Shown here one piece after another: positions 1 to 31,121 of a DNA stretch of 64,000 nt. A model generated the notes under the pieces. That model made no database searches. It saw only the letters and a program-made list of their open reading frames with translations, and was not told where the DNA came from. Source of the stretch: Anolis carolinensis (Eukaryota); contig NC_085846.1 of the NCBI RefSeq assembly GCF_035594765.1, positions 14,123,190 to 14,187,189 on the forward strand, in the 5' to 3' direction. Numbering within the stretch: position 1 is the stretch's first letter; every line of letters begins with the position of its first letter. The position numbers were made by a program, and so were the translations under genes.

Positions 1-8
1 CTGTGCTC

Positions 9-42
9 CGATGATGATGATGATGATGATGATGGTGATGAT
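9..42. repeat. (ATG/GAT)n microsatellite
   Basis: gatgatgatgatgatgatgatgatggtgatgata. Confidence 0.9.
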
Positions 43-128
43 ATATTTTATGGTACTGTTGCATTATCGAGTTGGAGGCCACAAGGGGGTGCTAGAGAGA
101 GAAGGGTGGTCCATTTTATGGGGTAGAG

Positions 129-238
129 CAGGCATGGGCAAACTTGGGCCCTCCAGGTGTTTTGGATTCCAACTCCCACAATTCCTAACAGCCTCAGGCC
201 TTTTCCTTTCCCCCATCAGCCGCTTTGCCCATGCCTGG
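129..238. mobile_element. Short hAT-like MITE (CAGGCATGGGCAAA family)
   Basis: TIRs caggcatgggcaaa ... tttgcccatgcctg; same family recurs throughout the window. Confidence 0.7.
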
Positions 239-499
239 GGTAGAGGGTGAGTTGAAGGAGGAAAACCATTTCTCCCAATTTTTGCTGGTTTTTCCTCCTC
301 TCCCCTTCTCATATCATGAACCAACATTGTTTCCACAAGTGGGACATGTGTGGGGGGAATAACAGAAAAACAGGTGGAAATGATTTTACTCCTTCAACTC
401 ACTTTCTACCCCAGAAAATGGACCATCCTTCTCTCTCTAGCGACCCCTTATGGCCTCTGCCCAGATAATGGAACAGTGCCCATTTTATTTATTATCCAC

Positions 500-2215
500 T
501 TCTCTTTTAAAAAAATAATATTTATTGAGTGTTTTTCATTAAAAGTCGTACATTAAAATTGATGGAGAAAAAATAGAAAAAGAGAAAAAGAAGAAAAATA
601 AAGAAAAAAGAAAAAAAGAGATAAGTGAGAAAGAGAGAGAAAAGAGAGAATATATATATAATAAAAAAGAGAAAAAAGAAAAAATATAAAGAAAAAATAA
701 TAGGGTATTCTTGGCTCCCGGGTATCTTCCTTGAGGTTTCTTTACTTTCATTCTTTCTTCCCTCCTCTTAAATTCTCCTCCTCCTCTTATTTCATATTCT
801 GTTGGGATGGATGTTTTGTTTCTCTTCATACCAATATCTTCTTTTTGTTTTGTTTTAAATATTCCATAATTTGGTTCCAATCTGTCACTTTCATATGGTT
901 CCCCTTGCTTTTTGAGATCAAGAAAGTAAGTCTGTCCATATTTGTTATATCCAGAATTTTTGTCAGCCAATCACCCTCCTCTGGTATTTCTTTCTTTTTC
1001 CATAATCTTGCATAACAGATTCTTGCTGCTGTAGTTAGCAAGAATAAAAGTTTGTCTTTATTTTTCTCTTATTTTTGTTTGTATATTCCTAATAGAAATA
1101 TTTCCGGTTTCATTGGTATTTTTACTTCTAGTATCTTTTGGGTCTTTTCCTGTATTTTTTTCCAAAAGGTCTTTGCTTCCTTAAATGACCACTACACGTG
1201 GAAGTATGTCCCTTCTTTCTTGCCACATTTTCAGCATTTTGTGTTCATATTTTTGTAACATTTTCCCAATTTGTGTAGTGTCCAGGGCCGGCCGGAGAAA
1301 ATTTACAATAGTAAGCGGGGGTGGGGAAAAGCGCCCCTCCCCCCGCCGGCGCCATGGGAGGCGTGGCCATGTGCCTCCCGCGGCGCCGGCAGGCTCCGCC
1401 TCCCGCGCCCTGCCCCCGCCTCCCGCCCAGCATCCCCTGGCCCCGCCTCCCACGCTGCGTGGGAGGCAGGGCCAGGGCACGCTGCGTGGGAGGCGGGGTC
1501 AGGGCGAGTAGCGTGGGAGGCGGGGCCAGGGTTGGCCCCACTTCCCGCGCTACTCACCCTCGCCCGTCTGGCCTTTTCCAGCTGGCCAGACTGCAGTGGA
1601 CCTCCCGCCCAGCGGGACCAGGGCACGCTGGGCGGGAGGCAGGGCAAGTAGCGCGGGAGGCGAGGCCAGGGCACGCTGGGCGGGAGGCAGGGCACCGCCC
1701 TGACGGTGCCCCACCTCCCGCCCAGCACGCCCTGGTCTAGCTGGCCCAAGTTGCTGGACGCAGGCGCAGATCGCCCAGCCGATCTGCACCTGCATCCAGC
1801 AACTTCCGCGCTTTGCCGTTTGGTGCGGCGTGGCGGCTGCAGCGGCGGCGCTACGGGGCACTGTTGAGGCATCAACAGCGCCCCCTAGCGGCGTGCGCCC
1901 GAGGCCACGGCTTAACGGGCCTCATAGGTCAAACCGGCCCTGGTAGTGTCCCATCCGTGTGACATTTTTTATCCAATATTCTTTTAAGTCAATTGCGTAT
2001 GTATATTTTAGGTTTTTTGGCCATATTTCCTCCCATTCCTTTCCTAATAGTTCTCCCGATGTTTTCTTTCCATCTGATCATGTATTCCTTCTCTCTTTCT
2101 GTCTCTGTGGCCCAGTCCAATAATTTCCTGTATATTTTGGTTATTATCTTCCTTATTATCTTATTCCAGACCCCATCTTCCTCTGAGAAGCCTTTCTCTT
2201 TATATTTACCCAAAA
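500..2215 (-). mobile_element. 5'-truncated, frameshifted L1 LINE (ORF2 C-terminus plus 3' UTR), interrupted by a hAT element
   Basis: Minus-strand ORF pieces KIYRKLLDW..EYMIRWKENIG and LTTAARICYARLWKKKEIP..W..KILDI are typical L1 ORF2 C-terminal motifs; pyrimidine-rich 3' UTR and AATAAA (tttatt near 521 on +). Confidence 0.75.
1283..1942. mobile_element. Non-autonomous GC-rich hAT DNA transposon (660 bp)
   Basis: TIRs cagggccgg / ccggccctg; perfect 8-bp TSD GTAGTGTC at 1275-1282 and 1943-1950; internal gggcacgctg..gggaggc repeats in both orientations. Confidence 0.9.
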
Positions 2216-3104
2216 AAATGATGGTTCCAGGCAGGGTACCAAAACAAAACAAAACAATGAACACAAAAATCCAATTAATCACTAAATTACATAAACTATA
2301 TATGTATATGCCAAGCCTTTGCCAGCTATTTATGCCCCATAACGGAAGATGGTCCAAAACAGTGGGATCAGCACTTCGAGTTATTGTTTCTGGTTTGGAT
2401 TATTTTGCATTTGTTGGAGCGAAGATTTCCAGAGTAAAAATGAGAAAGTGGCTCTGTACCTTTTAACAGTTGTGCAGAAGTTGACATTTTGATGGCTGTC
2501 ACTTATTACCTGATTGCACGACAACTCCTGATAAAATGTTCTCTTCTACACAACTGCTAAAGGTACAGGAGCCCACTTCAATATTTAATCTGACAACTCC
2601 AGCAAGGTGATCGCTGACATTTAAAGATTTACAAATTGTTCCATGATATTTCTGGTAGTGTTTGGACTGTAACTACCAGTCCGTGCAGTTTAACACTGTT
2701 CCTGCAAGCTGGGCATCAAGACAAAGTACTTGGATAACCAATATTCATATGAAAGAGGTAGAGTTTATTTTTGGATAGAATATACCTTTTTAGAAATAAA
2801 TCAGTTTTGCATTGTTTGTATACATGGTTGTATCTACTGTGACACCTTGCATCTTTATTGAATTTTATCTAGTACACATTAGTTTGTCATGTAATTATGA
2901 ACTTCTGTAACATCTAACAGCAATTTTAGATACTGTAGCACTATTTGGCAGACACATGCACGTACAAACATACATCCACATTTAGTTTCGATACACTCCT
3001 ATTCTAGAAGTCCCACAGCTTTCGATTTCTCCTCCCTTTCCAATTCACAGATCTGGGCACCCTGATTCAAGAAGCCAAAACCTATAAGGAGTGGTTCGGG
3101 GAGA

Positions 3105-3460
3105 GGATTATATTTCGCTTGGAAAAGAGAAGGTTGAGTGGGGAGATAATGGCCATGTTTAAATATCTGAAATATTTGTCATATTCAGGAGGGCACAAGC
3201 TTATTTTTCTCCTGCTCTAGAGACTAAGGAGCAATGGATTTAAATGGCAAAAAAAGAAATTCCACCTAAATATGAAGAAAAACCTAGTGGTAAGAACTTT
3301 TAGACAGTAGACACTGGACAATGCTCCTTGGAGTGTCTTCTTCTCTGGCATTTTTTAAACAGAGGCTGGATGGCCATCTGTCAGGAGTGCTTTATGTATT
3401 CCTGCGTAGCAGAATGAAGTTGGACTGGCGCTTGTGTTCTCTTCTAACTCTATGATTCTG
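3105..3460 (+). mobile_element. CR1 LINE 3' fragment (paralog at ~9150-9485)
   Basis: ttggaaaagagaaggttgag...ctggatggccatctgtcaggag...ttctaactctatgattct CR1-type 3' end. Confidence 0.7.
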
Positions 3461-4230
3461 TGGCAATTGGATGAAAGCTATAGACTCTTCCCCAGATATA
3501 TATACTTAAAATAAAAAGAAGGGTCATTTGTGCACCCAGTTCACAAGGACCTGTTTATGCCCATCTATTGATTCCAGGGGAGGTGGTGGTTCGGAGGCCG
3601 GAAAAGTTTTCCAAATTCTGGTCTTCCAGGTGTCTTGGGTCCTCTTTCTACACTGTGATATAATCCGAATGATCAAAGCAAAGAATCCACATTATCTGCT
3701 TTGAACTGGATTAGATCAGTCTACACTGCCATATAATCCAGTCAGAGCAGATAATCTGGATTCTATATGGCAGTGTAGAAGGAGCCCAAGACTTAATCTT
3801 CCAGAATGCCTGATTATGGGCCAAGGCAGCTGAGGCTGTTGGGACTTGAAGTACAAAATGCCTGGAATGCTAGTTTGAGGATTATAGGATCAGAGGTTAA
3901 GAACCTAAATACCTGTATTAAATGGAGAGAAATGCTGCTAGAAAATGGCAGGAGGCATCCACATTGTAGAATTATTGCACCATTTTTAACTCATATGGCT
4001 CAATGTTATGGAATCATGGACCAGGTCTTTAGTCTTCTTTGCTAAAGTTGATTGGTGTGTCATAAAGTGGATTCAATAGCAGTTTAACATAGTGCCAAAC
4101 TGTATTCATTCTACAGCAGGCCTGGGCAAACTTCGGCACTCCGGGTGTTTTGGACTTCAATTTTCACAGTTCCTAACAGTGGGTTGCTGTGAGTTTTCCA
4201 GGCTGTATGGCCATGTTACACAAGTATTCT

Positions 4231-5220
4231 TATAATAATAATAATAACAACAACAACAACAACAAAAACTTTATTCTTGTACCCTGCCTACATCTCCCCG
4301 GAGGGACTTGGGACGGCTTACATAAAAACAATCCAATCACAGCATAAATTAACATATAATTCATAACTTCAAAACAAAAAAAACATAATATAAAACAACA
4401 TAGTATGACAAATACTCAAAATCTAGCCCTAGTTACTACATATACAGAGGGTGACTAGTGCAATGCTCAGATAAGGTCATAGGTAAGATAGGGACAGGCA
4501 AGGAAGGGCAAGAAAAGTCGTATTAAAACAGCAAACCTATCAAATGGGGAGCGATGATAAAGTGCCGTCTGAATTTGTAAACAAGATACATGGCAGGTGG
4601 GCCTCTTCAAACAAAAGTGCACCAGCACAACCATGTTTTTAGCTCTCTGTGGAAGATAGACAAGGAGGGAGCCAGTCTAATCTCCCTGGAGAGCGAGTTC
4701 CAGAGTTGAGGAGCCACCACCGAGAAGGCCCTCTCTCTCGTCCCCACCAACCATACCTGAGACGGAGGTGGGAGCGAGAGAAGGGCCTCCCTGGAAGATC
4801 TTAGAGTCCGTGTGGGTTCATAGGGGAGGAGGCGATCATGGAGGTAAGCTGGTCCCAAGCTGTTTAGGGCTTTGTAGATGATAACCTGCGCCTTGAATTG
4901 GGTCCGGAAACTTATCGGTAGCCAATGGAGCTGTTTAAGCAGAAGGGTTTGAAATCGGACCGCTTTCTGTAACTAGCTCCAGTTATTAATCTGGCCGCTG
5001 ATCTTGTACCATTTGTAGTTTCCAAACCGTCTTCAAAGGCAGCCCCACATAGAGCGCATTGCAGTAATCCAGTCTGGACGTAACTAAGGTGTGGACCACC
5101 ATGGCCAAGTCAAACTTCACAAGGTACAGTCGCAGCTGGCACACAAGTTTGAACTGTGCAAAAGCCCTCCCGGCCACTGCCAATGCCTGAGCATCAAGCG
5201 TCAACGCTGAGTCCAGGATG
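4231..5220 (-). mobile_element. 5'-truncated L2 LINE
   Basis: ORF pieces LVTSRLDYCNALYVGLP and GPAYL..RTLRSS..RAFSVVAPQLWNSL are L2 C-terminal signatures; microsatellite tail at 4231-4266. Confidence 0.9.
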
Positions 5221-5477
5221 TTCATCCTCAGAGGTTGTGAGGTCTGTTGGAAACTAGGCAAGTGGGGTTTATATATATGTGGAATGTCCAGGGTGGGAGA
5301 AAGAACTCTTGTCTGTTTGAGGCAAGAGTGAGTGTTTCAATTGGCCACCTTGGTTAGCATTGAATAGCCTTTCAGCTTCACATCTGCCTCAAACAGACAA
5401 GAGTTCTTTCTTTCTCCCACCCTGGACCTTCCACAGATATATAAAACCCACTTGTCTAGTTTCCAACAGACCTCACA

Positions 5478-5520
5478 ACCTCTGACGATGCCTGCCACAG
5501 ATGCAGGTGAAACGTCAGGT
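5478..5520 (+). ncRNA. Minimal type I hammerhead ribozyme motif in a Penelope repeat
   Basis: acct-CTGACGA-t-gcctgc(cacagat)gcaggt-GAAA-cg-TC^aggt; stem I acct/aggt, stem II gcctgc/gcaggt. Confidence 0.7.
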
Positions 5521-5788
5521 AAATAATGCTTCTAGAACATTGCCATACACCCAGGAAAACTCACAGCAAGCCAGTGATTCCTCTGAGGGCAGAGGAGACC
5601 CAAGGACGCTAATGACTGAACAAAGGATGCCCCCCAGGCAAGAGACAAAACCTTTCCAATGCTAATTAGAATGATTAACTGAAACATTAATGCTGGCTTC
5701 CCAGTGACAAAGGACTCTTGCCACACCCTGGACTCTCCACAGATATATATTTTTTCCTTTCCTTGCCTAGTTTATCCATGCCACACAG

Positions 5789-5829
5789 CCTCTGAGGATG
5801 CCAGCCATAGATGTGGGCGAAACGTCAGG
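5789..5829 (+). ncRNA. Minimal type I hammerhead ribozyme motif
   Basis: cct-CTGAGGA-tgccagccatagatgtgggc-GAAA-cgTC^agg; one mismatch in stem II. Confidence 0.6.
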
Positions 5830-6019
5830 AGAGAATACTTCTGGAACATGGCCACACAGCCCGAAAGACATACAACAACCCTGTGATTCTGGCCATGAAA
5901 GCCTTCGACAACACATTCCTAACAGCAATTGTGGGAGTTGAAGTCCAAAACACCTGAAGGGCCAAGGTTTGCCCAAGCCTGTTCTAGTATTCCCTAAACT
6001 CTAGTCGGCTAAGTGTTTT

Positions 6020-6359
6020 GCACTACAACTCCCAGATCATTGGCCAAGGCAGCTGAGCTTTCGCGGATTTGAAATCCAAAAAAACCTGGGCCAGGTAGCT
6101 CGTGCGAAAGAGAGAAGTAAAGCTGTGAATGACTAGAGAGGAACCACGTGATCCCAGGAGGAGGCGGGGCCTGGGAAGCGGCATCCGCGGAGGCCAGTGG
6201 GGCACGAGAGAGGGGGGAGGGAGGCTGGCTTCCGGTTCCGGCCGGGCCTGAACGAGTTGCGGCCTGGCGGTGGGTTCAGTTGGGTTCCACTCACTCCGAC
6301 CGTGCCACGCCGGGACCAGCCTTGTTTGGGGAGCGAAGGAAGCAGAACTGCCTGGGCGG
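6020..6359 (+). promoter_or_regulatory. CpG-rich promoter/5' leader of the ZNF524-like gene (copy of the ZNF865 promoter)
   Basis: ACTACAACTCCCAG 6022-6035, CACGTG 6145-6150, GC box gaggcggggc, tandem ETS-like ttccggttccgg. Confidence 0.65.
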
Positions 6360-6995
6360 ATGCAATCTTCAGAGCCGGAGCTGCTGGCATCAGCCCCGCC
6401 ACCACGGCAGCTGTACTTTTGTCCGTTTTGCCCACGGACGTTCCTGTACCCGTCGGACTTGGAGCGCCACAGCATCACCCACTCAGAGAGCAAACCGTAT
6501 GTGTGCCGCGAGTGTGGCAAGGCCTTCAAGCGCTCCTCACATCTTCAGCGGCACAAGCACATCCATACTGGTGAAAGACCCTTCATCTGCCCGATCTGCC
6601 GCAAGGGCTTCCAGGAATCAGGTGAGCTCTTGCGCCACCAGCGAGTCCATACGGGGGAGAAGCCCTACCAGTGCCAGATTTGCCGGCTGCGCTTCACAGA
6701 ACGCAGCACCCTTCGCCGGCACGCCAAGCGGAAACACGCCCGGGAGACCCACTACCAGCGCTCAGTCGAGGAAGGAGACTGGGAATCAGAAATGGTGCCT
6801 GGAAGTGGTGATTGGGGGACAGAGGACCTTGGCAATAGCTGGAGCAATGAAGCATCAGAGGACTGTGTTGGGGAGGGGAACCAGTGGGGGGAAGCTGTAG
6901 AAGGCGGGAGAGGAAACAGTCCCATAATCATTTCACACCTGCCTGAGACTGAACATATCAAGGACAAAGACAAACTTGGAACACAACTTCCATAA
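6360..6995 (+). CDS. ZNF524: C2H2 zinc finger protein, ZNF524-like, 4 fingers, 211 aa from the first ATG
   Basis: [23 protein letters not shown]...[24 protein letters not shown] matches recalled ZNF524 fingers; acidic tail; position just upstream of ZNF865; AATAAA at 7021-7026. Confidence 0.8.
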
Positions 6996-7828
6996 ATGCA
7001 CAAAGCCTTGGGGCACCAGGAATAAAGGCAAACGGGGAACTGCAATTTTGCCTTGCAGTTTATCTAAAAGGACCTAGACCTTTGCAATGGCACTCAAGAT
7101 GGACATGAACATAAGGATGAGACTCTAACCTCAAGGACTGCTCTAGAACAGAGGAATATGAATGCAATAGCATTGCCAAAGACTGGAGATTTCTGTTGGT
7201 GGGCAGAGCGTCGTGGCTGCCCACTCCTGTGAATGAATATACAATATCATGATATCCAGAGTTATTGTTGAACTGGAGGAAGAGCCTCCTGTATTAACCT
7301 CTCTACAGGGTGGAGGAAATGGAACAGAGAATTTTGTTCTGTTAAGTATCTTGTGATTTTCAAGATAAATGAGTGCTGAGATAATTATGCTCCTCTCATA
7401 ATTGTACCAAACAAAACATTGATATTCGGTAATCTTCTGCAAGATGAATTGTCAATTTCCAAGTTTTTGTTTTTAAAGTTTCCTTTTTAAGATCAGCCTT
7501 TATGGAATAGGACATTTTCAGTTCTCAAACATTTCAATGAAATAACATGTGCAAAAGAACAATAGTTTTGGGGCGTTCTGTTTTTCTGTGTTTTGTCCCT
7601 CTTCCCATACCACCACATCCAGGAAATGTTATCAAAAGCTGGGAGATATTATTCTCTTGCTCTTTGCAGACTTCAGTTGTAGTGCAAGAGTTTTAGAGCA
7701 AGAGGGTGTGTGAACGTATTGCTAAGTATGGGATTGTTGTTTATGCGCCTTCAAGTCAGATCCCATTTATGGCAACCAAAATATAGGGGTTTCATTGCAA
7801 GATTTATTTACAGGAGGTTTGCTTGACT

Positions 7829-8155
7829 AAGGGAGCCCTGGTGGCGAAGTGTGTTAAAGCACTGAGCTGCTGAACTTGCAGACCAAAAGGTCCCAGGTTC
7901 AAATCCCAAGAGCGGAGTGAGCGCCCGCTATTAACTCCAGCTTCTGCCAACCTAGCAGTTCGAAAACATGCCAATGTGAGTAGATCAATAGGCACCGCTC
8001 CGGCGGGAAGGTAACGGGGCTCCATGCAGTCATGCCGGCCACCTGACCTGGAGATGTCTATGGACATCGCCGGCTCTTCGGCTTAGAAATGGAGATGAGC
8101 ACCAACCCCCAGAGTCAGACATGACTGGACTTAACGTCAGGGGAAAACCTTTACC
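7829..8155 (+). mobile_element. Sauria SINE
   Basis: tRNA-like head gggagccctggtggcg..ggttcaaatccc, tail acctttacc, TSD ttgcttgact (7819-7828 / 8156-8165). Confidence 0.9.
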
Positions 8156-10564
8156 TTGCTTGACTGAGTGAGCCTGCAAATCCTAGTCTCCAGAAGTGCT
8201 AGGCCAACATTGTACCCATGCTGGCTCTAAGTGTGGGATGATGTATCATCATTGTGATTTTCATCTGTGAAAAATGGAAGATAACGCAAGGTGAAGGAGA
8301 ACATAAATCTGATTTTCCCTTCTTGTCTCTGCATATGCCAGCAGCAAGAGAGGAGTTACTGATATAAAGTGGTTACTGTCTCTGATAACTGATATAAAGT
8401 GGCTACTGTCTCTGTCTACCTCTTAGCCCCATCCTCTTTTAATCAATGTGCAGTACATTGGGTAAGGAGCATTAATATAAGATTCAGAAGCTTTGCAAAA
8501 CCTTTGGAGGTAAAAACTATTTCAAAGTGTCTTTTCTATAGTCCCCACTATCATGTCCAGGGAACCAATTTGTTTAGAAGGACAACATGACATGTGCCAC
8601 CATCTCAGACTTTTCCCATCTCTTCCTAGTTTGCAGTTCATGGTGATAAGTCATGAGGTCAGTGTAAAACAGGATGAACTTTGCAATTATATGTGTCACC
8701 TTGAACCTTTTGAGGCTGTCCTTAGCACATTTGCAGACCATATTTGGCAGTACAACGAGCATGAGGACTAAGTACTTGGAGAAGCAATATTCATATGAAA
8801 GAGGTAGAGTTAATGTTTTGGATAGAAGATAAATTTTAGAAATAAACCAGTTTTGTATTGTTTGTATAAATGGTTGTGTCCATTGTGACACCTTGCATCT
8901 TTATTGAATTTTATCAAGTACACATTAGTTTACTATGTAGTTATGAACTCCTGCAATGTCTTAACAGCAATTTTAGATGGCAATATTTAGCAGACACATG
9001 CATGTGCAAACATACATCCACATTTAGTTTAGATACACTCCTATTTTAATAGTCCCACAGCTTTCCATTCCTCTTCCACTTCACAGATCTGGGCACCCTG
9101 ATTCAAGAAGCCAAGCCCTTTGAGGAGTGGTTCAGGAACCAGAGTATATTTAGCTTGGAAAAAAAGAAAGTTGAGAAGGGATATAATGGCCATGTTTAAA
9201 TATCTGAAATATTTGTCATATTTTTCTCCTGCTCTAGAGACTAAGGAGCAATGAATTCAATTGGCAGAAAAAGACATTCCACCTAAATATGAGGGAAAAC
9301 CATCTGATGGCAAGAGCTTTTAGGGAGCGGACACTGGACAATGCTCTTTGGAGTGTGGTGGAATCTTCTCTGGCATTTTTTAAACAGATGCTGGATGGTC
9401 GTCTGTCAGGAGTGCTTAGTGTATTCCTGCGTGGCAGAATGAGGTTGGACTGGCCCTTATGTTCTCTTCCAACTGTGATTCTGTGGCAATTGGATGAAAG
9501 CTATAGACCCTTTCACATGTATATGTACTTAAAGCACAATATTCAAAGTAAAATAAAAAGAAGGGCCATTATATCCCTTTTCAACTTTCCCTTTTCCAAG
9601 CTAAATATACTCTGCTTCCAGTTCACAATGATCTGTTTATGCCCATCTATTGATTCCTGGGGAGGTGGTTGTTCGGGGGCCAGAACAGTGTTTTCCAAAC
9701 TCTGGTCTTCCAGATGGCTTTGGCCCCTTCGGCACTACCATATAACCCAGATTATCTGATTTGAACTGGATTATATCAACCTAAACTGCCATATAATCCA
9801 GTTCAAAGCAGATAATCTGGATTTTATATGGCAGTGTAGAAGAGGCCTCTCAAAGCTCAAACTAGGGTCTGATGAAAATAGGAACTGCAGCACAAACACA
9901 GTCCAAGGCTTCACTTCCCAGAATCCCTGATTATAGTCCAAGGAAGCTGAGGCTTTTGGGACTTGAAGTACAAAACACCTGGAAGACTAGTTTGGGGGTC
10001 ACTGGGTCAGAGGTTCAGAACCTAAATCCCTGTGTTAAATGGACAGAAGGGCTGCCAGAAAATAGCTGGAGGCATCCATACTAGAATTAATGCAGTTTGA
10101 CACCACTTTTAACTCATATGGCTTAATGGTATGTTATGGAATCATGGAAGTTGTACTGCATTCATTCTACAGCAGGCCTGGGCAAACTTCAGGCCTCCAG
10201 GTGTTTTGGACTTCAGTTCCTAAAGTGGGTTGCTGTGAGTTTCTCGGGATGTATGGCCATGTTCCAGAAGCATTCTTTCCTGATGTTTCGCAGGCATCCT
10301 CAGAGATTGTGAGGTCTGTCGGAAACCAGGCAAGTGGGGTTTATATATCTGTGGAATGTCCAGGGTGGGAGAAAGAAAGAACTCTTGTCTGTTTGAGGCA
10401 GGTGTGAATGTTACAATTGGCCACCTTGATTACCATTGAATAGCTTTTTGGCTTCACACCTGCCTCAAGCAGACTAGAGTTCTTTCTTTCTCCCACCTTG
10501 GACCTTCCACGGATATATAAACCCCACTTGACTAGTTTCCAACAGACCTCACAACCTTTGAGGA

Positions 10565-10829
10565 CTTTTTTTGTGTCAGGAGCAACCCGAGTTGCTTCTG
10601 GTGTGAGAGAATTGGCCGTCTGCAAGGACGTTGCCCAGGGGACGCATGGATGTTTTGATGTTTTTACCATCCTTGTGGGAGGCTTCTCTCATGTCCCCGC
10701 ATGGAGCTGGAGCTGATAGAGGAAGCTCATCCGCGCTCTCCTCGGGTGGGATTCGAACCTGGCAGCCTTCAGGTCAGCAACCCAACCTTCAAGTCACAAG
10801 GCTTTAACCTCTCCGCCACCGGGGGCTCC
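10565..10829 (-). mobile_element. tRNA-derived SINE (second Anolis-type family)
   Basis: Poly-T on +, ggattcgaacc B-box complement, TSD acct(t/c)tgagga at 10554-10564 / 10830-10840; homologous to 45660-45927 and 55499-55771. Confidence 0.85.
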
Positions 10830-10830
10830 A

Positions 10831-10871
10831 CCTCTGAGGATGCCTGCCATAGATGCAGGCGAAACGTCAGG
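10831..10871 (+). ncRNA. Minimal type I hammerhead ribozyme motif
   Basis: cct-CTGAGGA-t-gcctgc(catagat)gcaggc-GAAA-cgTC^agg with a fully Watson-Crick stem II. Confidence 0.7.
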
Positions 10872-11049
10872 AAATAATGCTTCTGGAACATAGCCATGCA
10901 GCCCGGAAAGCAGCAAGGCAGTGATTCCGGCCATGAAAGCCTTCGACAACACATTCCTAAATGCAATTGTGGGCGCTGAAGTCCAAAACACTTGGAGGGC
11001 GGAAGTTTGCCCAGGTCTGTTCTAGTATTCTCTAAACTACATGTTTTGG

Positions 11050-11439
11050 ACTACAGCTCCCAGAATCCCAGATCATTGGCCAAGGCAGCTGAGCCTTCTG
11101 GGAGTTGAAGTCCAAAAAAAACCTGGACCAGGTATCTTGTACGAAAGAAACTAGCAAAGTGTGAATGACTAGAGAGGAATCACGTGATCCCAGGAGGAGG
11201 CGGGGTCTGGCAAGCGGCATCCGCGGAGGCCTCTGGGGCACCAGAGGGAGGGGAGGGGAGGGAGGCTGGTTTCCGGTTCCGGCCGGGCCTGGACGAGTTG
11301 CAGCCTGGCGGTGGGCCCTCCGCCCCGACCCGCGAGGGAGCAGGGAAGGGCTCTGGGGGGCTCCCCTCACTCCGACCGTGCCACGCCGGGACCAGCCCTG
11401 TTTGGGGCGCGGAGGAGGCTGGGGCAGCGCCATACGCCG
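11050..11439 (+). promoter_or_regulatory. ZNF865: ZNF865 CpG-island promoter and probable non-coding exon 1
   Basis: TCACGTGA 11180-11187, GC box, ttccggttccgg; consensus donor ccg|GTGAGT at 11439/11440. Confidence 0.7.
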
Positions 11440-12300
11440 GTGAGTGCCGACCAGAGCCAAGACGGGCCCGCTCCCCGAAGGAAGGCAGGAAGGCCCTCGC
11501 GCCATACTGTCCTCTGAGGCTAGCCCCCCTCCCCTCTGTTTTCCCCTTTTGCAAACCTCTCTCGCTCTCCTAAAGCCCCCTCCTCCGCCTCACGCTGCTT
11601 CGGCCCCATCGCTTTTCACCGTCCCACCCTACGTTAACATCTGACAACCTGGATCCAGTCTTTCTGATTCACCTGCACATTCTCCCGTTTTACATCTGCA
11701 TAACCCCCGCCCCAATCTTGATTTTCTAGCATAGATTGCTGTTCTGTGTGCCCCCCCCCCCCCAATTGTAAAGGTTGCCTTCTCTCCCTCCCACTTTGTA
11801 GATCACTCCCAAATCTTCTACACCAGGCATGGGCAAACATGGGCCCTCCAGGTGTTTTGAACTTCAACTCCCAACATTCCTAACAGCCTCAGGCCCTTTC
11901 CTTTTCCCCCTCAGCCCTTTTACCCCCCCCCCCCTCTGAAAACCATCCCAGTCTGTATTATGCCCTAAACTAGACCTTTCCAAACATTTCATGTTGGTGA
12001 CACACTTTTTAGACATGCATCATTTTGTGACACAGTCATTCAGTTTTACAAATAAGCTGGAGGTTATTATTATTGTTGTTGTTTATTTTTCTCCCACTTT
12101 TCTCCCATGGGTGGGACACAAAGCAGCAAACAATAATTAAATTGACAGAAATTACATGACACAAAAGCCAGATAAAACTGATAAACAGATAATACAATAA
12201 CCTTTTCTAAGAGATGCAGACACAGAGATAAATTGTTATAATGGAATTTATCGAGATGCAACATCACTCATGAAAACCTTTCACACACACACATATATAT

Positions 12301-18087: not shown

Positions 18088-21024
18088 ATGGAAGCCAATG
18101 CAGCAAGCGACGAGGGTGTGCATTTCCAGAGCTACCCCTTCGACTTTTTGGAGTTCCTGAACCACCAACGCTTTGAACCTATGGAGGCCTACAATCACGA
18201 GCACGCCAAAGCAGTCGCTGCCCTTCCCTGCCCACAGCCACAGTACGACTACACCCAGCAGACGACAGCTGCCCCACCGACCCACTTTGACCGTGTGCCC
18301 ACTGCCCTCGGCACATCAAAGCCCAAAGTTGAAGGCCCATCACCTTCTTCCTCTACAACTGTTTCATCAGCTAACATCCAAGTCAAGAAATCTGAACCAG
18401 GAGGTCCTGCACCGGCTCCTCAGCAGCAGCAGCAGCAACAACAACAACAGCCACCTTACAGCACTCCAGCAGTGGTGCCTGCAACCAGTCAGCCTCTCTT
18501 TGATAGCACAGCGGCTGCAGCCGCTGCAGCTGCAGCTTATAACACTCCTCAGTGGGGCATTGTGGATCTGTCCGGTCATCAGCACCTCTTCAGCAGCCTA
18601 AAACGTGGGCAGGCTCAAACTCCTGCTACTTCTGCTGGTGTTGTAGCTGGTGACAGCCAGGCAGGCAAGGACGACAAGAACTACTTCCGACGTTTAAAAT
18701 ACTTCATCGACCGGCGCTTCCCTTGTGGAGTGTGCCAAAAATCATTCAAGCAGTCATCTCACTTAGTGCAACACATGTTAGTGCACACGGGTGAGCGGCC
18801 CTATGAGTGTACCACTTGTGGGCGCACCTACAACCACATTTCCAGCCTCATCCGGCACCGCCGCTGTCACAAGGACACTGAGGATGCCACAGCAGCTGCC
18901 AGTGCAGCTGATGCTAATGTGGTAGCAGCGGCAGCCGCAGCAGCAGCAGCTGTGGTGGCTGCCAATGCAGCTACTGCTCCAGGTGCTGAGGGAACCACCC
19001 AGCCTCCTGCCCAAAGCAGCAACCCTCAAGTGGTACCTGCGCCTGCTGCGGGCACAGCAGTATCTGCTCTCAGTGCTGCCATAGCTCAGGCTGAAGGCCC
19101 CTTCACCTGCTCTCTTTGCTGGAAGGTGTTCAAAAAGCCAAGCCACCTGCACCAGCATCAGATCATTCACACAGGCGAAAAGCCATTCTCATGCTCTGTC
19201 TGCCAGAAAAGCTTCAACCGTCGGGAGAGCTTGAAACGACATGTGCGGACCCACTCAGACTTGTTGCGAGTGCAGTGCGGAGTCTGCGGCAAGGAATTCC
19301 GGGATGCCTCCTACCTGCTTAAGCACCAAGCAACCCATGCACCTCCTGGTACCTTACCACCACGTCCTGAGTATAAGTGTGATATCTGTGGCAAAGGCTA
19401 TGTGGCTCCTCAGAATCTACTGCGCCATCGGCAGCTACAACACGAAGGAGCTCAACTGCCCAAGGATGGCACCGGTGCCCTGTCCTACCTGCCTCCAGGG
19501 GCCTATCTTCTGCCACAAGACCCACAGGCAACTAGTTCTGATGGTGACACCAAACCAACCTCGTATGGACTTCTCGGTGCTCATCCATTGCTGGTGGGAA
19601 CAGCAGCAGGCAAGAATTTCTGTTGTGGGATCTGTGGCCGAGGGTTTGGGCGCCGAGAGACTCTCAAGCGGCATGAAAGGATCCACACAGGTGAGAAGCC
19701 TCACCAGTGCGCTGTGTGTGGGAAGCGCTTCCGTGAATCTTTCCACCTCAGCAAGCACCACGTGGTGCACACGCGGGAGAGACCCTACAAGTGTGAGATA
19801 TGTGGAAAGGTTTTTGGTTACCCACAGAGCTTAACCCGCCACAAACAAATCCACCGGCTGCAGCTTCCTTGCTCTTTGCCACCCATGGGGCCCTCCTTGA
19901 CACCCATGGGGCCATCGCTACCCCCACCTCCTGAGGGGCTAACGTATGGCTGCTCGGACTGTGGGGAGCGCTTTCCTGACCTCTTTCATGTCATGAGCCA
20001 CAAAGAAGTCCATGTGGCTGAGAAGCCGTACCCTTGTGATGTCTGTGGCAAGTGTTTCGGATTCATTGAAAACCTCATGTGGCACAAGCTGGTCCACCAG
20101 GCTGCTCCTGAGCGGCTCTTGCCACCAGATGAAACCGCAGCTGCGGTAGCCCCTCTGGAAAATGGGATGGCCAGTGGCGACAACTTGACATCTTTTGAGG
20201 ATCACCATCCCACCTTGCCAAGTGGCGAGCGCTTTTCATGCTCCATTTGCGGCCAAACCTTCAAGCATTTCCTGGGTCTTGTGACCCATAAGTATGTGCA
20301 CCTGGTGCGACGCACATTGGCCTGTTCAGTCTGTGGGCAGAGTTTTGCAGGAGCCTATGATCTGCTGCTGCATCGACGTACCCACCTGCAGAAGCGCCAT
20401 TTCTCTTGCCCAGTCTGTGGCAAACGTTTCTGGGAAGCTGCCCTTCTCATGCGCCATCAGCGTTGCCACACCGAGGAGCGCCCTTACCGCTGCACAGTCT
20501 GTGGACGTGGCTTCCTACGTTCGTGGTACCTGCGTCAACACAAAGTGGTGCACACTGGCGAGCGAGCCTACAAGTGTGCCCTCTGCAACAAACGGTTTGC
20601 CCAGTCGTCCAGCTTGGCTGAACATCAGCGCCTTCATGTCGTTGCTCGGCCCCAGCGTTGCCCCACTTGTGGCAAGACCTTCCGCTATCGCAGCAACCTT
20701 CTGGAGCATCAGCGAGTGCACTTGGGTGAGAAGGTCTACCGCTGCGACCGTTGCTCCAAGAGTTTCTTCTACCTGTCATCCATATTACGTCACCAACGTT
20801 CCCACGATGCAAAGCGTGAGTTACGATGTGGGGCCTGCCTCAAGCTCTTCAAAGACCCCAAGTATTTCAGCAAACATCTCCAGGCCCACCAAGGTGGACG
20901 CCCATTCAAGTGCAGCACCTGCGGAGAAGCCTTCTCCAATACCTATGGGCTCAAGAAGCACCGCCACATTCACAAGATGGAGCGCTTTGCTGCTATGGGG
21001 GCTCACAAGGAACAACAACCCTAG
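18088..21024 (+). CDS. ZNF865: Zinc finger protein 865, 978 aa, 20 C2H2 fingers, single coding exon
   Basis: MEAN..EGVHFQSYPFDFLEFLNHQRFEPME..HAKAVAALPC is the recalled ZNF865 N-terminus; acceptor ...ttctctAG at 18064; 20 fingers counted; poly-Q and poly-A tracts. Confidence 0.93.
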   Translation: MEANAASDEGVHFQSYPFDFLEFLNHQRFEPMEAYNHEHAKAVAALPCPQPQYDYTQQTTAAPPTHFDRVPTALGTSKPKVEGPSPSSSTTVSSANIQVKKSEPGGPAPAPQQQQQQQQQQPPYSTPAVVPATSQPLFDSTAAAAAAAAAYNTPQWGIVDLSGHQHLFSSLKRGQAQTPATSAGVVAGDSQAGKDDKNYFRRLKYFIDRRFPCGVCQKSFKQSSHLVQHMLVHTGERPYECTTCGRTYNHISSLIRHRRCHKDTEDATAAASAADANVVAAAAAAAAAVVAANAATAPGAEGTTQPPAQSSNPQVVPAPAAGTAVSALSAAIAQAEGPFTCSLCWKVFKKPSHLHQHQIIHTGEKPFSCSVCQKSFNRRESLKRHVRTHSDLLRVQCGVCGKEFRDASYLLKHQATHAPPGTLPPRPEYKCDICGKGYVAPQNLLRHRQLQHEGAQLPKDGTGALSYLPPGAYLLPQDPQATSSDGDTKPTSYGLLGAHPLLVGTAAGKNFCCGICGRGFGRRETLKRHERIHTGEKPHQCAVCGKRFRESFHLSKHHVVHTRERPYKCEICGKVFGYPQSLTRHKQIHRLQLPCSLPPMGPSLTPMGPSLPPPPEGLTYGCSDCGERFPDLFHVMSHKEVHVAEKPYPCDVCGKCFGFIENLMWHKLVHQAAPERLLPPDETAAAVAPLENGMASGDNLTSFEDHHPTLPSGERFSCSICGQTFKHFLGLVTHKYVHLVRRTLACSVCGQSFAGAYDLLLHRRTHLQKRHFSCPVCGKRFWEAALLMRHQRCHTEERPYRCTVCGRGFLRSWYLRQHKVVHTGERAYKCALCNKRFAQSSSLAEHQRLHVVARPQRCPTCGKTFRYRSNLLEHQRVHLGEKVYRCDRCSKSFFYLSSILRHQRSHDAKRELRCGACLKLFKDPKYFSKHLQAHQGGRPFKCSTCGEAFSNTYGLKKHRHIHKMERFAAMGAHKEQQP

Positions 21025-29141: not shown

Positions 29142-31121
29142 TCAGTGTGGCTTGACACTCCATAGGTCTTTCACTATGACTTTACCCCCATGTCTTGTCC
29201 CCTCCTGCCCATGAAGCCGGCGATGCTTGGCAAAATTGGAAGAATTATTAAAACGCCTGTAGCAGACAGCACACTCAAAGGGTTTCTCTCCAGTGTGTAG
29301 CCTCCGGTGAGTAACCAGGGCTGAGCTTTGAGTGAATCGCTTGCCGCAGACGTTGCAACCAAAGGGCCGTTCGCCCGTGTGAACCCGCAGATGCTCCTTC
29401 AGATCTGTGGCCCGACGAAACTGCTTGGGGCATGCAAAGCACAGGAAGGGTTTGGAATCTAAATCTGGCAAAGAGTGCTGTCTATAGGTTTCAGGTTCTT
29501 GAAAAGGAAAACTAAGTGGTGAACTCCCATCTTCTTCCCAGTGATGGGAAACGCTTCTAAATTGGTGTTGTGAATGGCTATGGGAGGACGCAGAGATGTC
29601 ACAAGGCAAGGACCATGGTTCAGGACTTTCTCGCTGCCAGGGAGATGCATTGTTAGATATGCCTATGGTAGAACAATCCTCAAATTCATCCTTTTCTTTC
29701 ATTATCCTAATATTTGGCTCTTCCCAGGTCAAAACATTACTCTCATTGGCACGTGTCCAGGAAGACACTTTGGGTGCAACAACATTAATATTTTTGGGAG
29801 TGTCTACTTGGACGTTCATCCATTTCTCCTTGTTGGTGCCCCCATCCTGGGTTACCTCTTCAAACTGTCCAGGGTTTTGGTGTCTTAGGTCATCAGCGAC
29901 ATCTGCATTACTGCCGTTTTGCCTCGGCTCCAAGATACTAACATCCATATTTGGATTCAGTCCACTGAGATGGCTTGTACCATTTTGCCTCATGTTTGGG
30001 CCAGTACCATCTCCACTCCTGTGCTTCAGCCCTTTAAGGTAGTCTCCATTTGGCCTCCTTAATAAATAGCTCCTGACTCTGCTCTCTTGACCCTGTTTAT
30101 GAATACCCTTCCTGTCGCCATCAGCTTGCAAAAGGCCTTTCCCAAAACTGCTGCCATCTAGCTGTAACTTATTACTGTTCTCCTCAAGTTGCTTGTGTTC
30201 TTCCCGAGTGTGACTTCCACCAGCTTTATTTGGCCTCAGGGCTTTAGTGTCATTTTCACCACTCACATTCCTCAGTGGCTGGAAGCTGTGGCCATTTTCA
30301 GTCACTTCTGAGCCTTGGCTACATTCACCACTGTCTCCCAAGCAACCATAATCGTATTTGCTATCTTCCATCTTAACACCAATACATCCATGGCTACTCT
30401 GCCTTGTTTGATGGCTACTGTCTTGTCTTAGTCCTCTTCCTTTGAAATAGGCCATATTGTCACTAGGTTGCCTTAAGCTGCCATTTTGAGGTATCCTGTT
30501 ATTGGAACTAATGCCTTGCCATTCCTTAGGGTCTTGGTTCCTCCTGTTCTCACCATTATTTAATTCTTGGGTGACCTGATAGCCATTTTGTCCTTCTGTG
30601 AACTGGCTCTGTTTCTTCCCAAGAAAGAGATCACAGTCTTTCTCATCATCCCTTGTGTTACAGTGGCCAAACAGTTGGCTGTGGATGCGTTGATGCTTCC
30701 GGAAATTAGAGCCGTTGTTGAAAGACTTAAAGCAGACGCCACAGTGAAAGGGCCGCTCGCCAGTATGGATGCGCATATGGCCAGAAAGCACGGAGCTCTG
30801 GGTGAAACGCTTGCCACAGACACCACAGCCGTAGGGCCTTTCACCGGTGTGAACCCGTTCGTGGTCGCGCCGGTCAGAAGCCCTCTTGAACCGCTTGGAG
30901 CAGAAGGAGCAGGTGTAGGGCCTCTCCGTAGGGTGGCCCATGGCCTCTGGATTGTCCGGCAACCAATTCTGTGGCTCTAAAACAAAGCTTTTGCATCCTG
31001 GGCATTGTGGAACGTGTCCTGTGGGCCCAGCAAGGGTTGGCAAGTCCTCTTGGCAAAATGGGCAGATGGAGGGGATTTCTGGCCCTGTCTCTTCTTTCAC
31101 CGTCACCAGCTCTATCTCCAT
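29142..31121 (-). CDS. ZNF784: ZNF784-like zinc finger protein, 659 aa, two clusters of 3 C2H2 fingers
   Basis: [10 protein letters not shown] / [10 protein letters not shown] / [10 protein letters not shown] match recalled ZNF784 fingers; convergent with ZNF865; acceptor ttttctccAG before 31163 and an in-frame stop upstream of the ATG. Confidence 0.8.

What the first reader, a model, noticed from the sequence alone, without database searches (positions are those of the whole stretch)
2713..11439. Promoter capture: ZNF524 fingers placed behind a duplicate of the ZNF865 promoter/exon 1
Seen: 2713-6345 and 8759-11421 are paralogous through the E-box, GC box, ETS sites and most of ZNF865 exon 1. 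Copy B continues to a splice donor at 11440. Copy A has no such donor and reaches the ZNF524-like ATG (6360) about 15 nt after homology ends. The ORF has only ~16 aa before finger 1 and lacks the AT-hook and LLIDxQGxPYTV motif I recall in mammalian ZNF524 (the latter is present in the ZNF581 paralog here). The ORF is otherwise intact. Inference: a lineage-specific, intronless chimeric gene, co-regulated with ZNF865, that lost its original 5' end.
Basis: partly seen in the sequence, partly recalled or inferred. Interest (0 to 1): 0.78.

Follow-up and report, generated by a model that had tools for sequence, protein, structure and literature searches.

The report
Chimeric ZNF524 copy behind ZNF865 promoter
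In the green anole, one tandem duplication of about 11 kb copied the back half of the telomere-binding gene ZNF524 and joined it to a copy of the neighbouring ZNF865 promoter, making an expressed, shortened extra gene while the full-length ZNF524 survives just upstream; this is a clean but ordinary way for a new gene to arise.

Summary
Window 2713-6343 and 8759-11419 are collinear paralogues. Only copy B keeps the ZNF865 exon-1 splice donor (11440). Copy A runs into a 211-aa four-finger ZNF524-type ORF (6360-6995) that lacks the conserved N-terminus.

The window is Anolis carolinensis. An intact 374-aa ZNF524 lies 11.6 kb upstream of the ORF, outside the window. The first protein search missed it because of its length cap.

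- **Origin:** The ORF, its 3'UTR and copy A belong to one tandem duplication. It runs from ZNF524 codon 148 to 20 nt before the ZNF865 exon-1 donor.
- **Junction:** There is a single new junction, at 6337-6343, with the 7-nt microhomology AGGAGGC.
- **Age:** Unconstrained parts of the unit all diverge by about 0.13, and dS is 0.114. That is half the A. carolinensis/A. sagrei dS (0.229). The tree puts both anole copies together (100/99).
- **Expression:** Contigs from small public runs cover 6244/6290-7861 at 14-130x with nothing upstream. The copy therefore appears to be transcribed from the copied promoter, unspliced, and 6360 is the first AUG.
- **Selection:** The new copy evolves fast (12 nonsynonymous and 5 synonymous changes, omega about 0.7) but keeps its reading frame.

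It is a new member of a known kind, a tandem-duplication chimera. Co-regulation with ZNF865 and any protein function remain untested.

The parts
2713..6343 (+). Copy A of the ZNF865 upstream region. It is the downstream end of duplication copy 1, and it carries copy-specific insertions at about 4232-5222 and 5489-5788.
   Evidence: It is collinear with 8759-11419, with substitution-only K2P of 0.09-0.20. Its 5' edge at 2713 is a deletion boundary relative to Sceloporus and A. sagrei.
6098..6343 (+). Copied CpG-island promoter plus the truncated ZNF865 exon-1-like leader. It holds an E-box at 6145, a GC box at 6160 and ETS cores at 6229-6241.
   Evidence: GC is 0.65 and CpG o/e is 0.77, against 0.69 for copy B. 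Contigs of run X4 pile up at 5946-6702.
6337..6343 (+). The single novel junction of the tandem duplication. The 7-nt microhomology AGGAGGC is shared by both parental sequences and now reads AGGAAGC.
   Evidence: The three-way comparison covers ZNF865 exon 1 (11413-11419), the chimera, and parental ZNF524 codons 148-150. Contigs from X12 (6244-6388), X7 (6290-6388) and X4 (6292-6702) bridge it.
6244..6359 (+). 5' leader of the chimeric transcript. It contains no upstream AUG.
   Evidence: The furthest-upstream contigs of the RNA-like runs X12 and X7 start at 6244 and 6290, with no depth upstream. There is no ATG between 6130 and 6359.
6360..6995 (+). ORF of 211 aa, equal to residues 156-374 of ZNF524 minus 8 codons. 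It holds four C2H2 fingers and the acidic tail. NCBI has annotated it (P0145).
   Evidence: Pfam hits are. It is 93% identical to the parent P0148 and 100% identical to P0145. The ZNF524-DNA structure 7ysf matches residues 14-128. dS to the parent is 0.114 and branch omega is about 0.7.
6996..7707 (+). Duplicated ZNF524 3'UTR and downstream region.
   Evidence: It is 94% identical to window -5210..-4479. Contigs cover up to 7358 at full depth and up to 7861 at lower depth. X14 has a contig at 6866-7608.
8156..8355 (+). Distal duplicated block of the ZNF524 downstream flank. A repeat insertion at 7708-8155 separates it from the 3'UTR copy.
   Evidence: It is 87% identical to window -4424..-4225, K2P 0.144, the same as the promoter-region blocks.
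8470..11419 (+). Copy B of the ZNF865 upstream region, still in its ancestral position ahead of ZNF865.
   Evidence: 8470-8780 is contiguous with Sceloporus L007:18567-18919 across the 8759 boundary. 8759-11419 aligns to copy A.
11130..11439 (+). ZNF865 CpG-island promoter and non-coding exon 1. The splice donor GT is at 11440-11441.
   Evidence: Exon and donor are conserved in Crotalus horridus about 7 kb upstream of its ZNF865 CDS. X4 contigs lie at 10931-11650. Splicing to exon 2 was not checked with reads.
18088..21024 (+). ZNF865 coding exon. This gene donated the promoter and leader.
   Evidence: ORF. It is 81% identical at the nucleotide level to Crotalus ZNF865, and its N-terminal region is 79-85% identical to P0121.

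Best explanation
About 11 kb of the green-anole chromosome was duplicated in tandem. The stretch ran from inside the single coding exon of ZNF524 (codon 148) to 20 nt before the end of the non-coding first exon of the next gene, ZNF865.

A tandem duplication makes one new junction. Here the junction (window 6337-6343, 7-nt microhomology) welds the first copy of the ZNF865 promoter and leader to the second copy of the ZNF524 3' part. Both parents stay intact. Full-length ZNF524 lies 11.6 kb upstream, outside the window. ZNF865 lies downstream with its own promoter copy and donor.

The fused unit is transcribed from the copied CpG-island/ETS promoter, with a 5' end near 6244-6290. It is unspliced. 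It would be translated from the first AUG (6360), which is internal Met156 of ZNF524. The product is a 211-aa protein made of the four DNA-binding fingers and the C-terminal tail, without the 155-residue N-terminus.

Shown here: the structure, the junction, the relative age, and the presence of collinear RNA-like contigs.

Inferred:
- That the copied promoter drives the transcript.
- That the protein is made.
- That it still binds TTAGGG-type DNA. The human four-finger domain alone does so (PMC10716145), and the ZF1/ZF2 contact residues are kept.

The event dates to about half the A. carolinensis/A. sagrei divergence, roughly 20-25 My if that split is 38-50 My (PMC9635203, PMC9596491).
For: **Identity of the locus.** Exact look-ups place the window on A. 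carolinensis CM069372.1. They show a 374-aa ZNF524 (P0148) and the 211-aa ORF (P0145) 11.6 kb apart on the same strand. L004 overlaps the window exactly.

**One duplication unit.** The composite self-BLAST gives -5893..-4479 ~ 6337..7707 and -4424..-4225 ~ 8156..8355, in addition to the A/B blocks. All are collinear. Divergence of the unconstrained parts is uniform: promoter-region blocks K2P 0.09-0.20, distal flank 0.144, synonymous sites 0.114.

**Junction.** The junction shows the AGGAGGC microhomology in both parents.

**Ancestral state.** Laticauda, Varanus, Hemicordylus, Sceloporus, A. sagrei, tuatara, turtles, alligator, a frog and mammals all have the N-terminal LLID-type motif directly upstream of the MQSS...PPPR linker. 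The CDS is single-exon in Mauremys, both anoles and Sceloporus.

**Timing.** Site patterns are 27: 7: 6 for (Acar1,Acar2) (p = 1e-5). The ML tree is (Scel,(Asag,(Acar1,Acar2))) with 100/99 support. dS between the copies is 0.114, against 0.229 to A. sagrei.

**Expression.** In runs of only 30 and 110 million letters, contigs cover 6244/6290-7861 at 14-130x with no depth upstream. They match the chimera (0-2 differences) and not the parent. Both promoter copies keep CpG o/e of about 0.7. Run X4 shows depth peaks at both.
Against: - The library type of the runs is not on record. 'RNA' is inferred from depth and shape, and contigs cannot show true 5' ends.
- Absence of the duplication in A. sagrei was inferred from the tree and not seen directly, because L006 ends before the relevant DNA. 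Gene conversion across the whole 2-kb ZNF524 part could mimic a young age, although the promoter blocks give the same K.
- Copy 2 lacks about 6 kb of ancestral intergenic DNA. The event may therefore have been complex (template switching) rather than a simple duplication followed by a deletion.
- The omega of about 0.7 on the new copy is not distinguishable from neutrality (p = 0.56).
- An older RefSeq model (P0151) joins a full N-terminus to this ORF.
Confidence: 0.82

Rival explanations
1. One reading: the only ZNF524 gene of this lineage lost its own 5' end when a duplicate of the ZNF865 promoter/exon 1 was put in front of its fingers.
For: Within the window alone this fits. No N-terminal ZNF524 coding sequence is found at 1-6336 by tblastn. 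The first word search returned no full-length lizard ZNF524.
Against: An intact 374-aa ZNF524 lies 11.6 kb upstream on the same strand. It is under strong purifying selection (omega 0.02 against A. sagrei). The ORF's 3'UTR and flank are duplicated too. The blank was a length-cap artefact, since 374 aa exceeds the 369-aa limit.
Confidence: 0.03
2. Same origin, but the chimera is a transcribed duplicate in decay with no function of its own. The promoter copy still fires, and the ORF is intact only because too little time has passed.
For: On its branch there are 12 nonsynonymous and 5 synonymous changes plus a 24-nt deletion. Omega is about 0.7 and not different from 1 (p = 0.56), whereas the other branches total 2 nonsynonymous and 26 synonymous changes (Fisher p = 1e-5). 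There are changes at or near recognition-helix positions of fingers 1, 3 and 4. The Kozak context at 6360 is weak.
Against: There is no frameshift and no stop. From the indel rate of the neutral blocks (26 events in 2374 nt), about 3.5 events were expected in the CDS, and only one in-frame event is seen (p about 0.04). The CDS and 3'UTR of the copy changed at under half the neutral rate. The CpG island is kept. Depth in the RNA-like runs is high.
Confidence: 0.4
3. Two separate events: an older duplication of the ZNF865 promoter region, followed later by insertion of a ZNF524 fragment between the copies. Alternatively, an old single event followed by gene conversion of the ZNF524 part.
For: Raw BLAST identities differ: 78-79% for the promoter blocks against 91% for the ZNF524 part.
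Against: The gap comes from indels and constraint. Substitution-only K2P of the promoter blocks (about 0.13) equals that of the unconstrained distal ZNF524 flank (0.144) and dS (0.114). The 27 sites supporting (Acar1,Acar2) are spread evenly over 6347-8313. An insertion exactly at the A/B boundary would be a coincidence.
Confidence: 0.08
4. Assembly artefact: a false join or a collapsed or expanded repeat in the long-read assembly.
For: The older RefSeq model P0151 (366 aa) has a full N-terminus joined to exactly this C-terminus.
Against: Contigs from three independent studies cross the junction without differences: X12 6244-6388, X7 6290-6388, X4 5946-6321 and 6292-6702. The copies differ by about 5-13% and carry copy-specific insertions. 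The unitig break at 6359 falls exactly where the two paralogues start to share 31-mers.
Confidence: 0.02

Closest known systems
Chimeric genes created by tandem duplications that span parts of two neighbouring genes (population and comparative work in Drosophila, e.g. PMC5460883, PMC4069613; partial/chimeric duplicates in C. elegans, from my own knowledge of Katju & Lynch)
   Same: - One tandem duplication with breakpoints inside two adjacent same-strand genes.
- A single new junction that joins the 5' part (promoter and leader) of the downstream gene to the 3' part of the upstream gene.
- Both parents kept.
- The new unit transcribed.
   Different: - The 5' donor contributes only a promoter and about 100 nt of non-coding leader, so no protein-level fusion results. 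The product is an N-terminally truncated parent started at an internal Met.
- It is fixed or old (K about 0.13), not a segregating variant.
- It is in a vertebrate.
ZNF524, vertebrate telomere-binding four-finger protein (PMC10716145; structure 7ysf)
   Same: - Four C2H2 fingers, 93% identical to the anole parent.
- The RxxHxxR motif of finger 2 and the finger-1 Arg are kept.
- It sits in the ZNF524-ZNF865 neighbourhood.
   Different: - It lacks residues 1-155, including the WGPKLHSALT and LVLIDAEGVPHTV motifs.
- It has an 8-residue deletion after the fingers and 12 substitutions.
- It is driven by a ZNF865-type promoter.
- It is a paralogue, not the orthologue.
Retrogenes and processed copies that acquire a foreign promoter
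   Same: An intronless coding unit expressed from a promoter that is not the parent's own.
   Different: - There is no poly(A) tract and no target-site duplication.
- Non-transcribed flanking DNA and the neighbour's promoter were co-duplicated in order and in tandem.
- The parent CDS is itself single-exon, so the lack of introns says nothing.

Membership tests
ZNF524 family (ZNF524/580/581-type four-finger proteins) | Four tandem C2H2 fingers with the ZNF524-type sequence, including RxxHxxR in finger 2 | tested here: met
   Pfam finds four zf-C2H2 stretches. The ORF is 93% identical to anole ZNF524 P0148. 7ysf matches at 3e-47 over residues 14-128. The motif R58-S60-H61-R64 is present.
ZNF524 family (ZNF524/580/581-type four-finger proteins) | Conserved N-terminal region with the LLIDxQGVPYTV-type motif upstream of the fingers | tested here: not met
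   The ORF starts at the equivalent of Met156. In-frame upstream sequence is ZNF865-leader-derived and closed by a stop before 6270. The motif is present in all compared orthologues.
ZNF524 orthologue (the one-to-one gene next to ZNF865) | Single copy in the conserved position, descended by speciation only | tested here: not met
   A full-length copy collinear with A. sagrei and Sceloporus ZNF524 lies upstream. The tree places the window ORF as its young sister.
Tandem-duplication chimeric gene | Two adjacent parental genes, both retained, with the duplicated segment collinear and in tandem | tested here: met
   Searches show collinear blocks in the order ZNF524(full), flank, A | ZNF524 3' part, flank, B, ZNF865.
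Tandem-duplication chimeric gene | One novel junction joining the interior of gene 2 to the interior of gene 1 | tested here: met
   The junction is at 6337-6343 with 7-nt microhomology.
Tandem-duplication chimeric gene | A transcript that crosses the junction | tested here: inconclusive
   Contigs at 6244-6388 and 6290-6388 in small, deep, RNA-like runs cross it. The library type is not on record, and contigs do not prove a single molecule.
Retrogene | Loss of parental introns, a poly(A) remnant, target-site duplications and a dispersed location | tested here: not met
   The copy lies in tandem, and flanking non-transcribed DNA was co-duplicated. The parent CDS has no intron to lose.
Pseudogene | Disabled reading frame or neutral evolution without expression | tested here: inconclusive
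   The frame is intact and the copy appears expressed. Omega of about 0.7 is not separable from 1.

The most novel reading that the evidence does not exclude
The 211-aa product is a lineage-specific, fingers-only ZNF524. It still binds telomeric repeats but lacks the N-terminal effector part. Expressed from a ZNF865-type promoter, it would compete with or modulate full-length ZNF524 at telomeres in the A. carolinensis group. Its burst of substitutions in fingers 1, 3 and 4 would then reflect retuned DNA specificity rather than decay.
Probability: 0.15. Interest if true: 0.6.

Novelty: new member of a known kind. Interest (0 to 1): 0.38.

Why it matters
It is a fully resolved vertebrate example of gene birth by one tandem duplication. 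Both parents, the junction with its microhomology, the relative date, the shift in selective regime and signs of expression are all in hand. It also corrects how this locus should be read: the green anole has an intact ZNF524 plus a truncated paralogue with a foreign promoter, not a damaged ZNF524. If the short protein is made, it is a natural 'minimal DNA-binding domain' version of a telomere-binding factor, and it would be easy to test against its full-length parent. The case also shows how a length cap in a homology search can turn a partial duplicate into an apparent gene truncation.

Tried and rejected
- **First protein word search.** It returned no full-length lizard ZNF524. This was misleading, because the 374-aa proteins lie just above the 1.75x length cap. 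The exact-sequence cluster look-up found them.
- **Thamnophis locus L001.** An assembly gap sits exactly upstream of the fingers. Its model P0001 is fused to a reverse-transcriptase fragment, so it is uninformative.
- **Two ZNF865 N-terminal searches.** They returned only a rattlesnake, a turtle, a bird, frogs and a few generic zinc-finger proteins, and no anole or Sceloporus ZNF865. I could not fetch the DNA upstream of ZNF865 in A. sagrei or Sceloporus, so I could not look directly for presence or absence of the duplication there.
- **Upstream coding exon spliced to a possible acceptor after 'tcttcag' (6372).** Rejected. Contigs are collinear through 6244-6705, and the unitig break at 6359 is explained by 31-mers shared with the parent from 6359 on.
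- **Two-event history, suggested by 78% against 91% BLAST identity.** Rejected after counting substitutions only and measuring dS.
- **tblastn of seven ZNF524 N-termini against the whole window.** The only hits were the junction-proximal residues at 6336-6359 and the ZNF581 motif.
- **CpG island within 10 kb upstream of the parental CDS.** None was found, so the parental promoter was not located.
- **Operators' rules.** The window holds no N.
Full report
**1.

A self-comparison of the window finds five collinear, same-strand blocks joining 2713-6343 to 8759-11419. The base-level alignment of the last block shows near-identity through an E-box, a GC box and two tandem ETS cores. After 6343/11419 the two sequences part.

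Copy B goes on for 20 nt to a strong donor (G|GTGAGT, GT at 11440). Copy A goes on for 16 nt to an ATG at 6360 that opens a 211-codon ORF ending at 6995. The ORF has four C2H2 fingers.

The depth table from public runs shows that 8884-9680 and the promoter-proximal parts are single-copy DNA. The match is therefore a segmental duplication. The stretches 5700-6097, 7690-8286, 9680-9878 and 10078-11072 are high-copy repeats.

The exon with its donor is conserved about 7 kb upstream of the ZNF865 coding exon of Crotalus horridus (L002:2787-3001). This supports calling 11130-11439 the ZNF865 promoter and exon 1. I did not verify its splicing with reads.

**2. What the ORF is**

The closest proteins are ZNF524 of snakes, tuatara, turtles, alligator, a frog and mammals. 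All of them carry, directly upstream of the linker that begins the window ORF (MQSS...PPPR), a conserved N-terminal region with an LLIDxQGVPYTV-type motif.

In the window, the ZNF524 reading frame can be followed only eight codons upstream of the ATG (6336-6359). Before that the DNA is ZNF865-leader-like. No other N-terminal ZNF524 coding sequence exists anywhere in the window. The only such motif belongs to the ZNF581-like gene at 39880-40659(-).

**3. The key correction**

An exact-sequence look-up shows two things. The 211-aa ORF is an annotated protein (P0145), and the window lies on Anolis carolinensis chromosome record CM069372.1. The same record also encodes a 374-aa 'zinc finger protein 524' (P0148).

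A. sagrei, Sceloporus and Hemicordylus have 373-374-aa orthologues, and the Varanus model has 295 aa. The 373-374-aa proteins lie just above the 369-aa ceiling of the first search, which explains why it missed them.

Fetching both loci places the full-length single-exon CDS at window coordinates -6335..-5211. That is 11.6 kb upstream of the ORF, on the same strand and outside the window. L004 overlaps the window head base for base.

The full-length protein has the whole ancestral N-terminus. It is under very strong purifying selection, with omega 0.02 against A. sagrei. So ZNF524 has not lost its 5' end in this lizard. The window ORF is a partial paralogue.

**4. One tandem duplication explains everything**

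On the composite sequence (L004 plus the window) a self-BLAST adds two blocks to the A/B set:
- -5893..-4479 ~ 6337..7707, which is the ZNF524 codons from 148 on, the stop and the 3'UTR.
- -4424..-4225 ~ 8156..8355.

The order along the chromosome is: ZNF524 (full), its flank, ancestral intergenic DNA, copy A | ZNF524 3' part, its flank, copy B, ZNF865 donor, intron, ZNF865 CDS. This is what a tandem duplication gives when the duplicated segment starts inside ZNF524 and ends inside ZNF865 exon 1.

Such an event creates a single new junction. A three-way comparison puts it at 6337-6343. There both parental sequences share AGGAGGC, a 7-nt microhomology. The chimera now reads AGGAAGC.

Comparison with Sceloporus (L007) and A. 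sagrei (L006) shows later changes:
- Copy 1 is collinear with the ancestral intergenic region, apart from a deletion exactly at 2712|2713.
- Copy 2 has lost about 6 kb of it, equivalent to Sceloporus 12196 to about 18450.
- Copy B keeps ancestral sequence upstream of 8759 (8470-8758).

Whether the 6-kb loss in copy 2 came later or was part of a complex event cannot be told.

**5. One event, not two**

Raw BLAST identities (78-79% for A/B, 91% for the ZNF524 part) suggested different ages. Counting substitutions only removes the difference:

| Region | K2P or dS |
|---|---|
| Promoter-region blocks | 0.09-0.20 (about 0.13) |
| Unconstrained distal ZNF524 flank | 0.144 |
| Synonymous sites of the two coding copies | 0.114 |
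| CDS overall | 0.05 |
| 3'UTR | 0.06 |

The CDS and 3'UTR are lower because they are constrained.

**6. Date and lineage**

With A. sagrei and Sceloporus as references over 6337-8360, the parsimony-informative sites split as follows (binomial p = 1e-5):
- 27 group the two A. carolinensis copies.
- 7 and 6 support the two alternative groupings.

The 27 sites are spread evenly over the region. The ML tree is (Sceloporus,(A. sagrei,(copy 1, copy 2))) with 100/99 support.

dS between the copies (0.114) is half of dS between A. carolinensis and A. sagrei (0.229), and a quarter of that to Sceloporus (about 0.45). Published dates for the carolinensis/sagrei split are under 50 My (PMC9596491) or up to about 38.5 My among Cuban anoles (PMC9635203). 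The event would then be roughly 20-25 My old. That is older than the 8-14 My splits within the carolinensis group given in PMC9635203.

Direct absence in A. sagrei was not seen, because the fetched locus ends about where its promoter region should begin.

**7. Expression**

No run is on record as RNA, so what follows is inference from shape and depth.

Runs X12 (30 million letters) and X7 (110 million), from different studies, carry overlapping contigs from 6244 (X12) or 6290 (X7) to 7861:
- The contigs from 6359 to 7358 have depths of 32-129.
- The furthest-upstream pieces have depths of 14 (X12, 6244-6388) and 61 (X7, 6290-6388).
- Depth beyond 7358 is 14-21.
- There is no depth at all between 6098 and those starts.
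- There are no contigs over 8884-9281.

That is far too deep and too local for genomic reads of a genome of about 2 Gb.

The contigs differ from the window at 0-2 positions. The parent differs at about 5%, so the contigs come from the chimera. X14 has a contig at 6866-7608 at depth 42. It also has a weak contig (6458-6633, 8 differences) that carries the parent's diagnostic bases.

The contig break at 6359 in both X12 and X7 falls at the first base after the last paralogue difference (6358). From there the two genes share 31-mers. So the break is a graph branch and not a splice site.

The transcripts are collinear with the DNA. There is no ATG between 6130 and 6359, so 6360 is the first AUG, though in a weak context.

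Both promoter copies keep CpG-island character, with o/e 0.77 and 0.69. Run X4, of unknown type, has depth peaks of 15-100 at exactly 5946-6702 and 10931-11650, against about 5 elsewhere. This looks like an open-chromatin or promoter-mark library.

ZNF865 exon 1 has no contigs in X12 and X7. The data give no support for equal regulation of the two genes.

**8. Selective regime**

Changes were polarised with the two outgroups:

| Branch | Synonymous | Nonsynonymous | Other |
|---|---|---|---|
| New copy | 5 | 12 | one 24-nt in-frame deletion |
| Parent | 6 | 2 | |
| A. sagrei | 13 | 0 | |
| Shared stem | 7 | 0 | |

The contrast is significant (Fisher p = 1e-5). The new copy's omega (about 0.7) cannot be told from 1 (p = 0.56).

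Several changes lie in the fingers: L to P and Q to P in finger 1; S to I, V to I and R to Q in finger 3; N to S at helix position 2 of finger 4. The residues shown to contact telomeric DNA in human ZNF524 are kept. These are the finger-1 Arg and the finger-2 R-x-S-H-x-x-R motif (PMC10716145).

The F at residue 23 of the reference is the ancestral I in the contigs of three runs (6425-6426).

Against pure decay:
- The indel density of the neutral blocks (26 events in 2374 aligned nt) predicts about 3.5 events in the CDS on this branch. One in-frame event is seen (p about 0.04).
- The CDS and 3'UTR of the copy changed at less than half the neutral rate.

I read this as strongly relaxed constraint with some remaining selection on the frame. 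Function is open.

**9. How it most likely works**

The copied ZNF865 CpG-island/ETS promoter fires. It makes an unspliced mRNA whose leader of about 70-115 nt is ZNF865-exon-1-derived. The mRNA's body is the ZNF524 3' part with its own 3'UTR.

Translation from Met156 would give the four fingers and the acidic tail. In human ZNF524 the four fingers alone bind TTAGGG duplex with a KD of about 90 nM (PMC10716145). A fingers-only protein could therefore occupy the same sites without the N-terminal part.

That last step is inference. Neither translation nor binding was tested.

**10. Comparison with what is known**

This is the textbook route to a chimeric gene by tandem duplication across two neighbours. 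It has been studied at scale in Drosophila (PMC5460883, PMC4069613).

It is not a retrogene. Non-transcribed flanks were co-duplicated in tandem, and the parent CDS has no intron to lose.

It belongs to the ZNF524 family by its fingers, but it fails the N-terminal motif and the one-to-one orthology tests.

The protein model is already in NCBI's annotation. I found no paper that mentions ZNF524 together with Anolis, and the one paper holding both ZNF865 and Anolis is on an unrelated subject. The origin appears undescribed.

The older RefSeq model XP_003225058.2 (P0151) joins the parental N-terminus to this C-terminus. It is best explained as a chimeric model from the earlier assembly.

**11. 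Verdict**

The finding is a well-resolved, lineage-specific chimeric partial duplicate. It is a new member of a known kind and of moderate interest.

Noticed in passing
window 1300-1950: An orphan CpG island (GC 0.73, CpG o/e 0.73) with 21-27-nt tandem repeats at 1451-1531 and 1612-1695. It lies in the intergenic DNA between parental ZNF524 and copy A. No BLAST match was reported for it in the A. sagrei or Sceloporus loci (low-complexity filter on, hits of 120 nt or more listed).
   Followed up: partly
window 6425-6426: The reference reads GT here, while contigs of runs X12, X7 and X4 read AA. Residue 23 of the ORF is therefore F in the reference and the ancestral I in other individuals. This is either a polymorphism or a reference-specific change.
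   Followed up: partly
protein P0151 (XP_003225058.2), relating to window 6360-6995: An older RefSeq model of 366 aa joins the parental ZNF524 N-terminus (with one residue different) to exactly the window ORF. No such N-terminus lies upstream of 6360 in the current assembly. It is probably a chimeric model from the earlier assembly.
   Followed up: partly
window 5946-6702 and 10931-11650: Run X4 (library type not on record) has contigs with depth 15-100 at just these two CpG-island copies, against about 5 in the unique DNA between them. It has none over 6894-7291. This resembles an open-chromatin or promoter-mark library.
   Followed up: no
L001 16460-17362 (Thamnophis sirtalis): An assembly gap lies directly upstream of the ZNF524 fingers. 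The RefSeq model P0001 bridges it by fusing a reverse-transcriptase fragment to the fingers.
   Followed up: yes
window 5700-6097, 7690-8286, 9680-9878, 10078-11072: Very high-copy repeats, with summed contig depth of 1e3-1e6 in all four runs. One family is present in both promoter copies (5223-5581 / 10226-10564, partly as inverted copies). The 7708-8155 element is an insertion specific to duplication copy 2.
   Followed up: partly
window 29142-31121 (-): A 659-aa ORF with two clusters of three C2H2 fingers separated by a linker of about 400 residues, in the position of ZNF784. It was not examined further.
   Followed up: no
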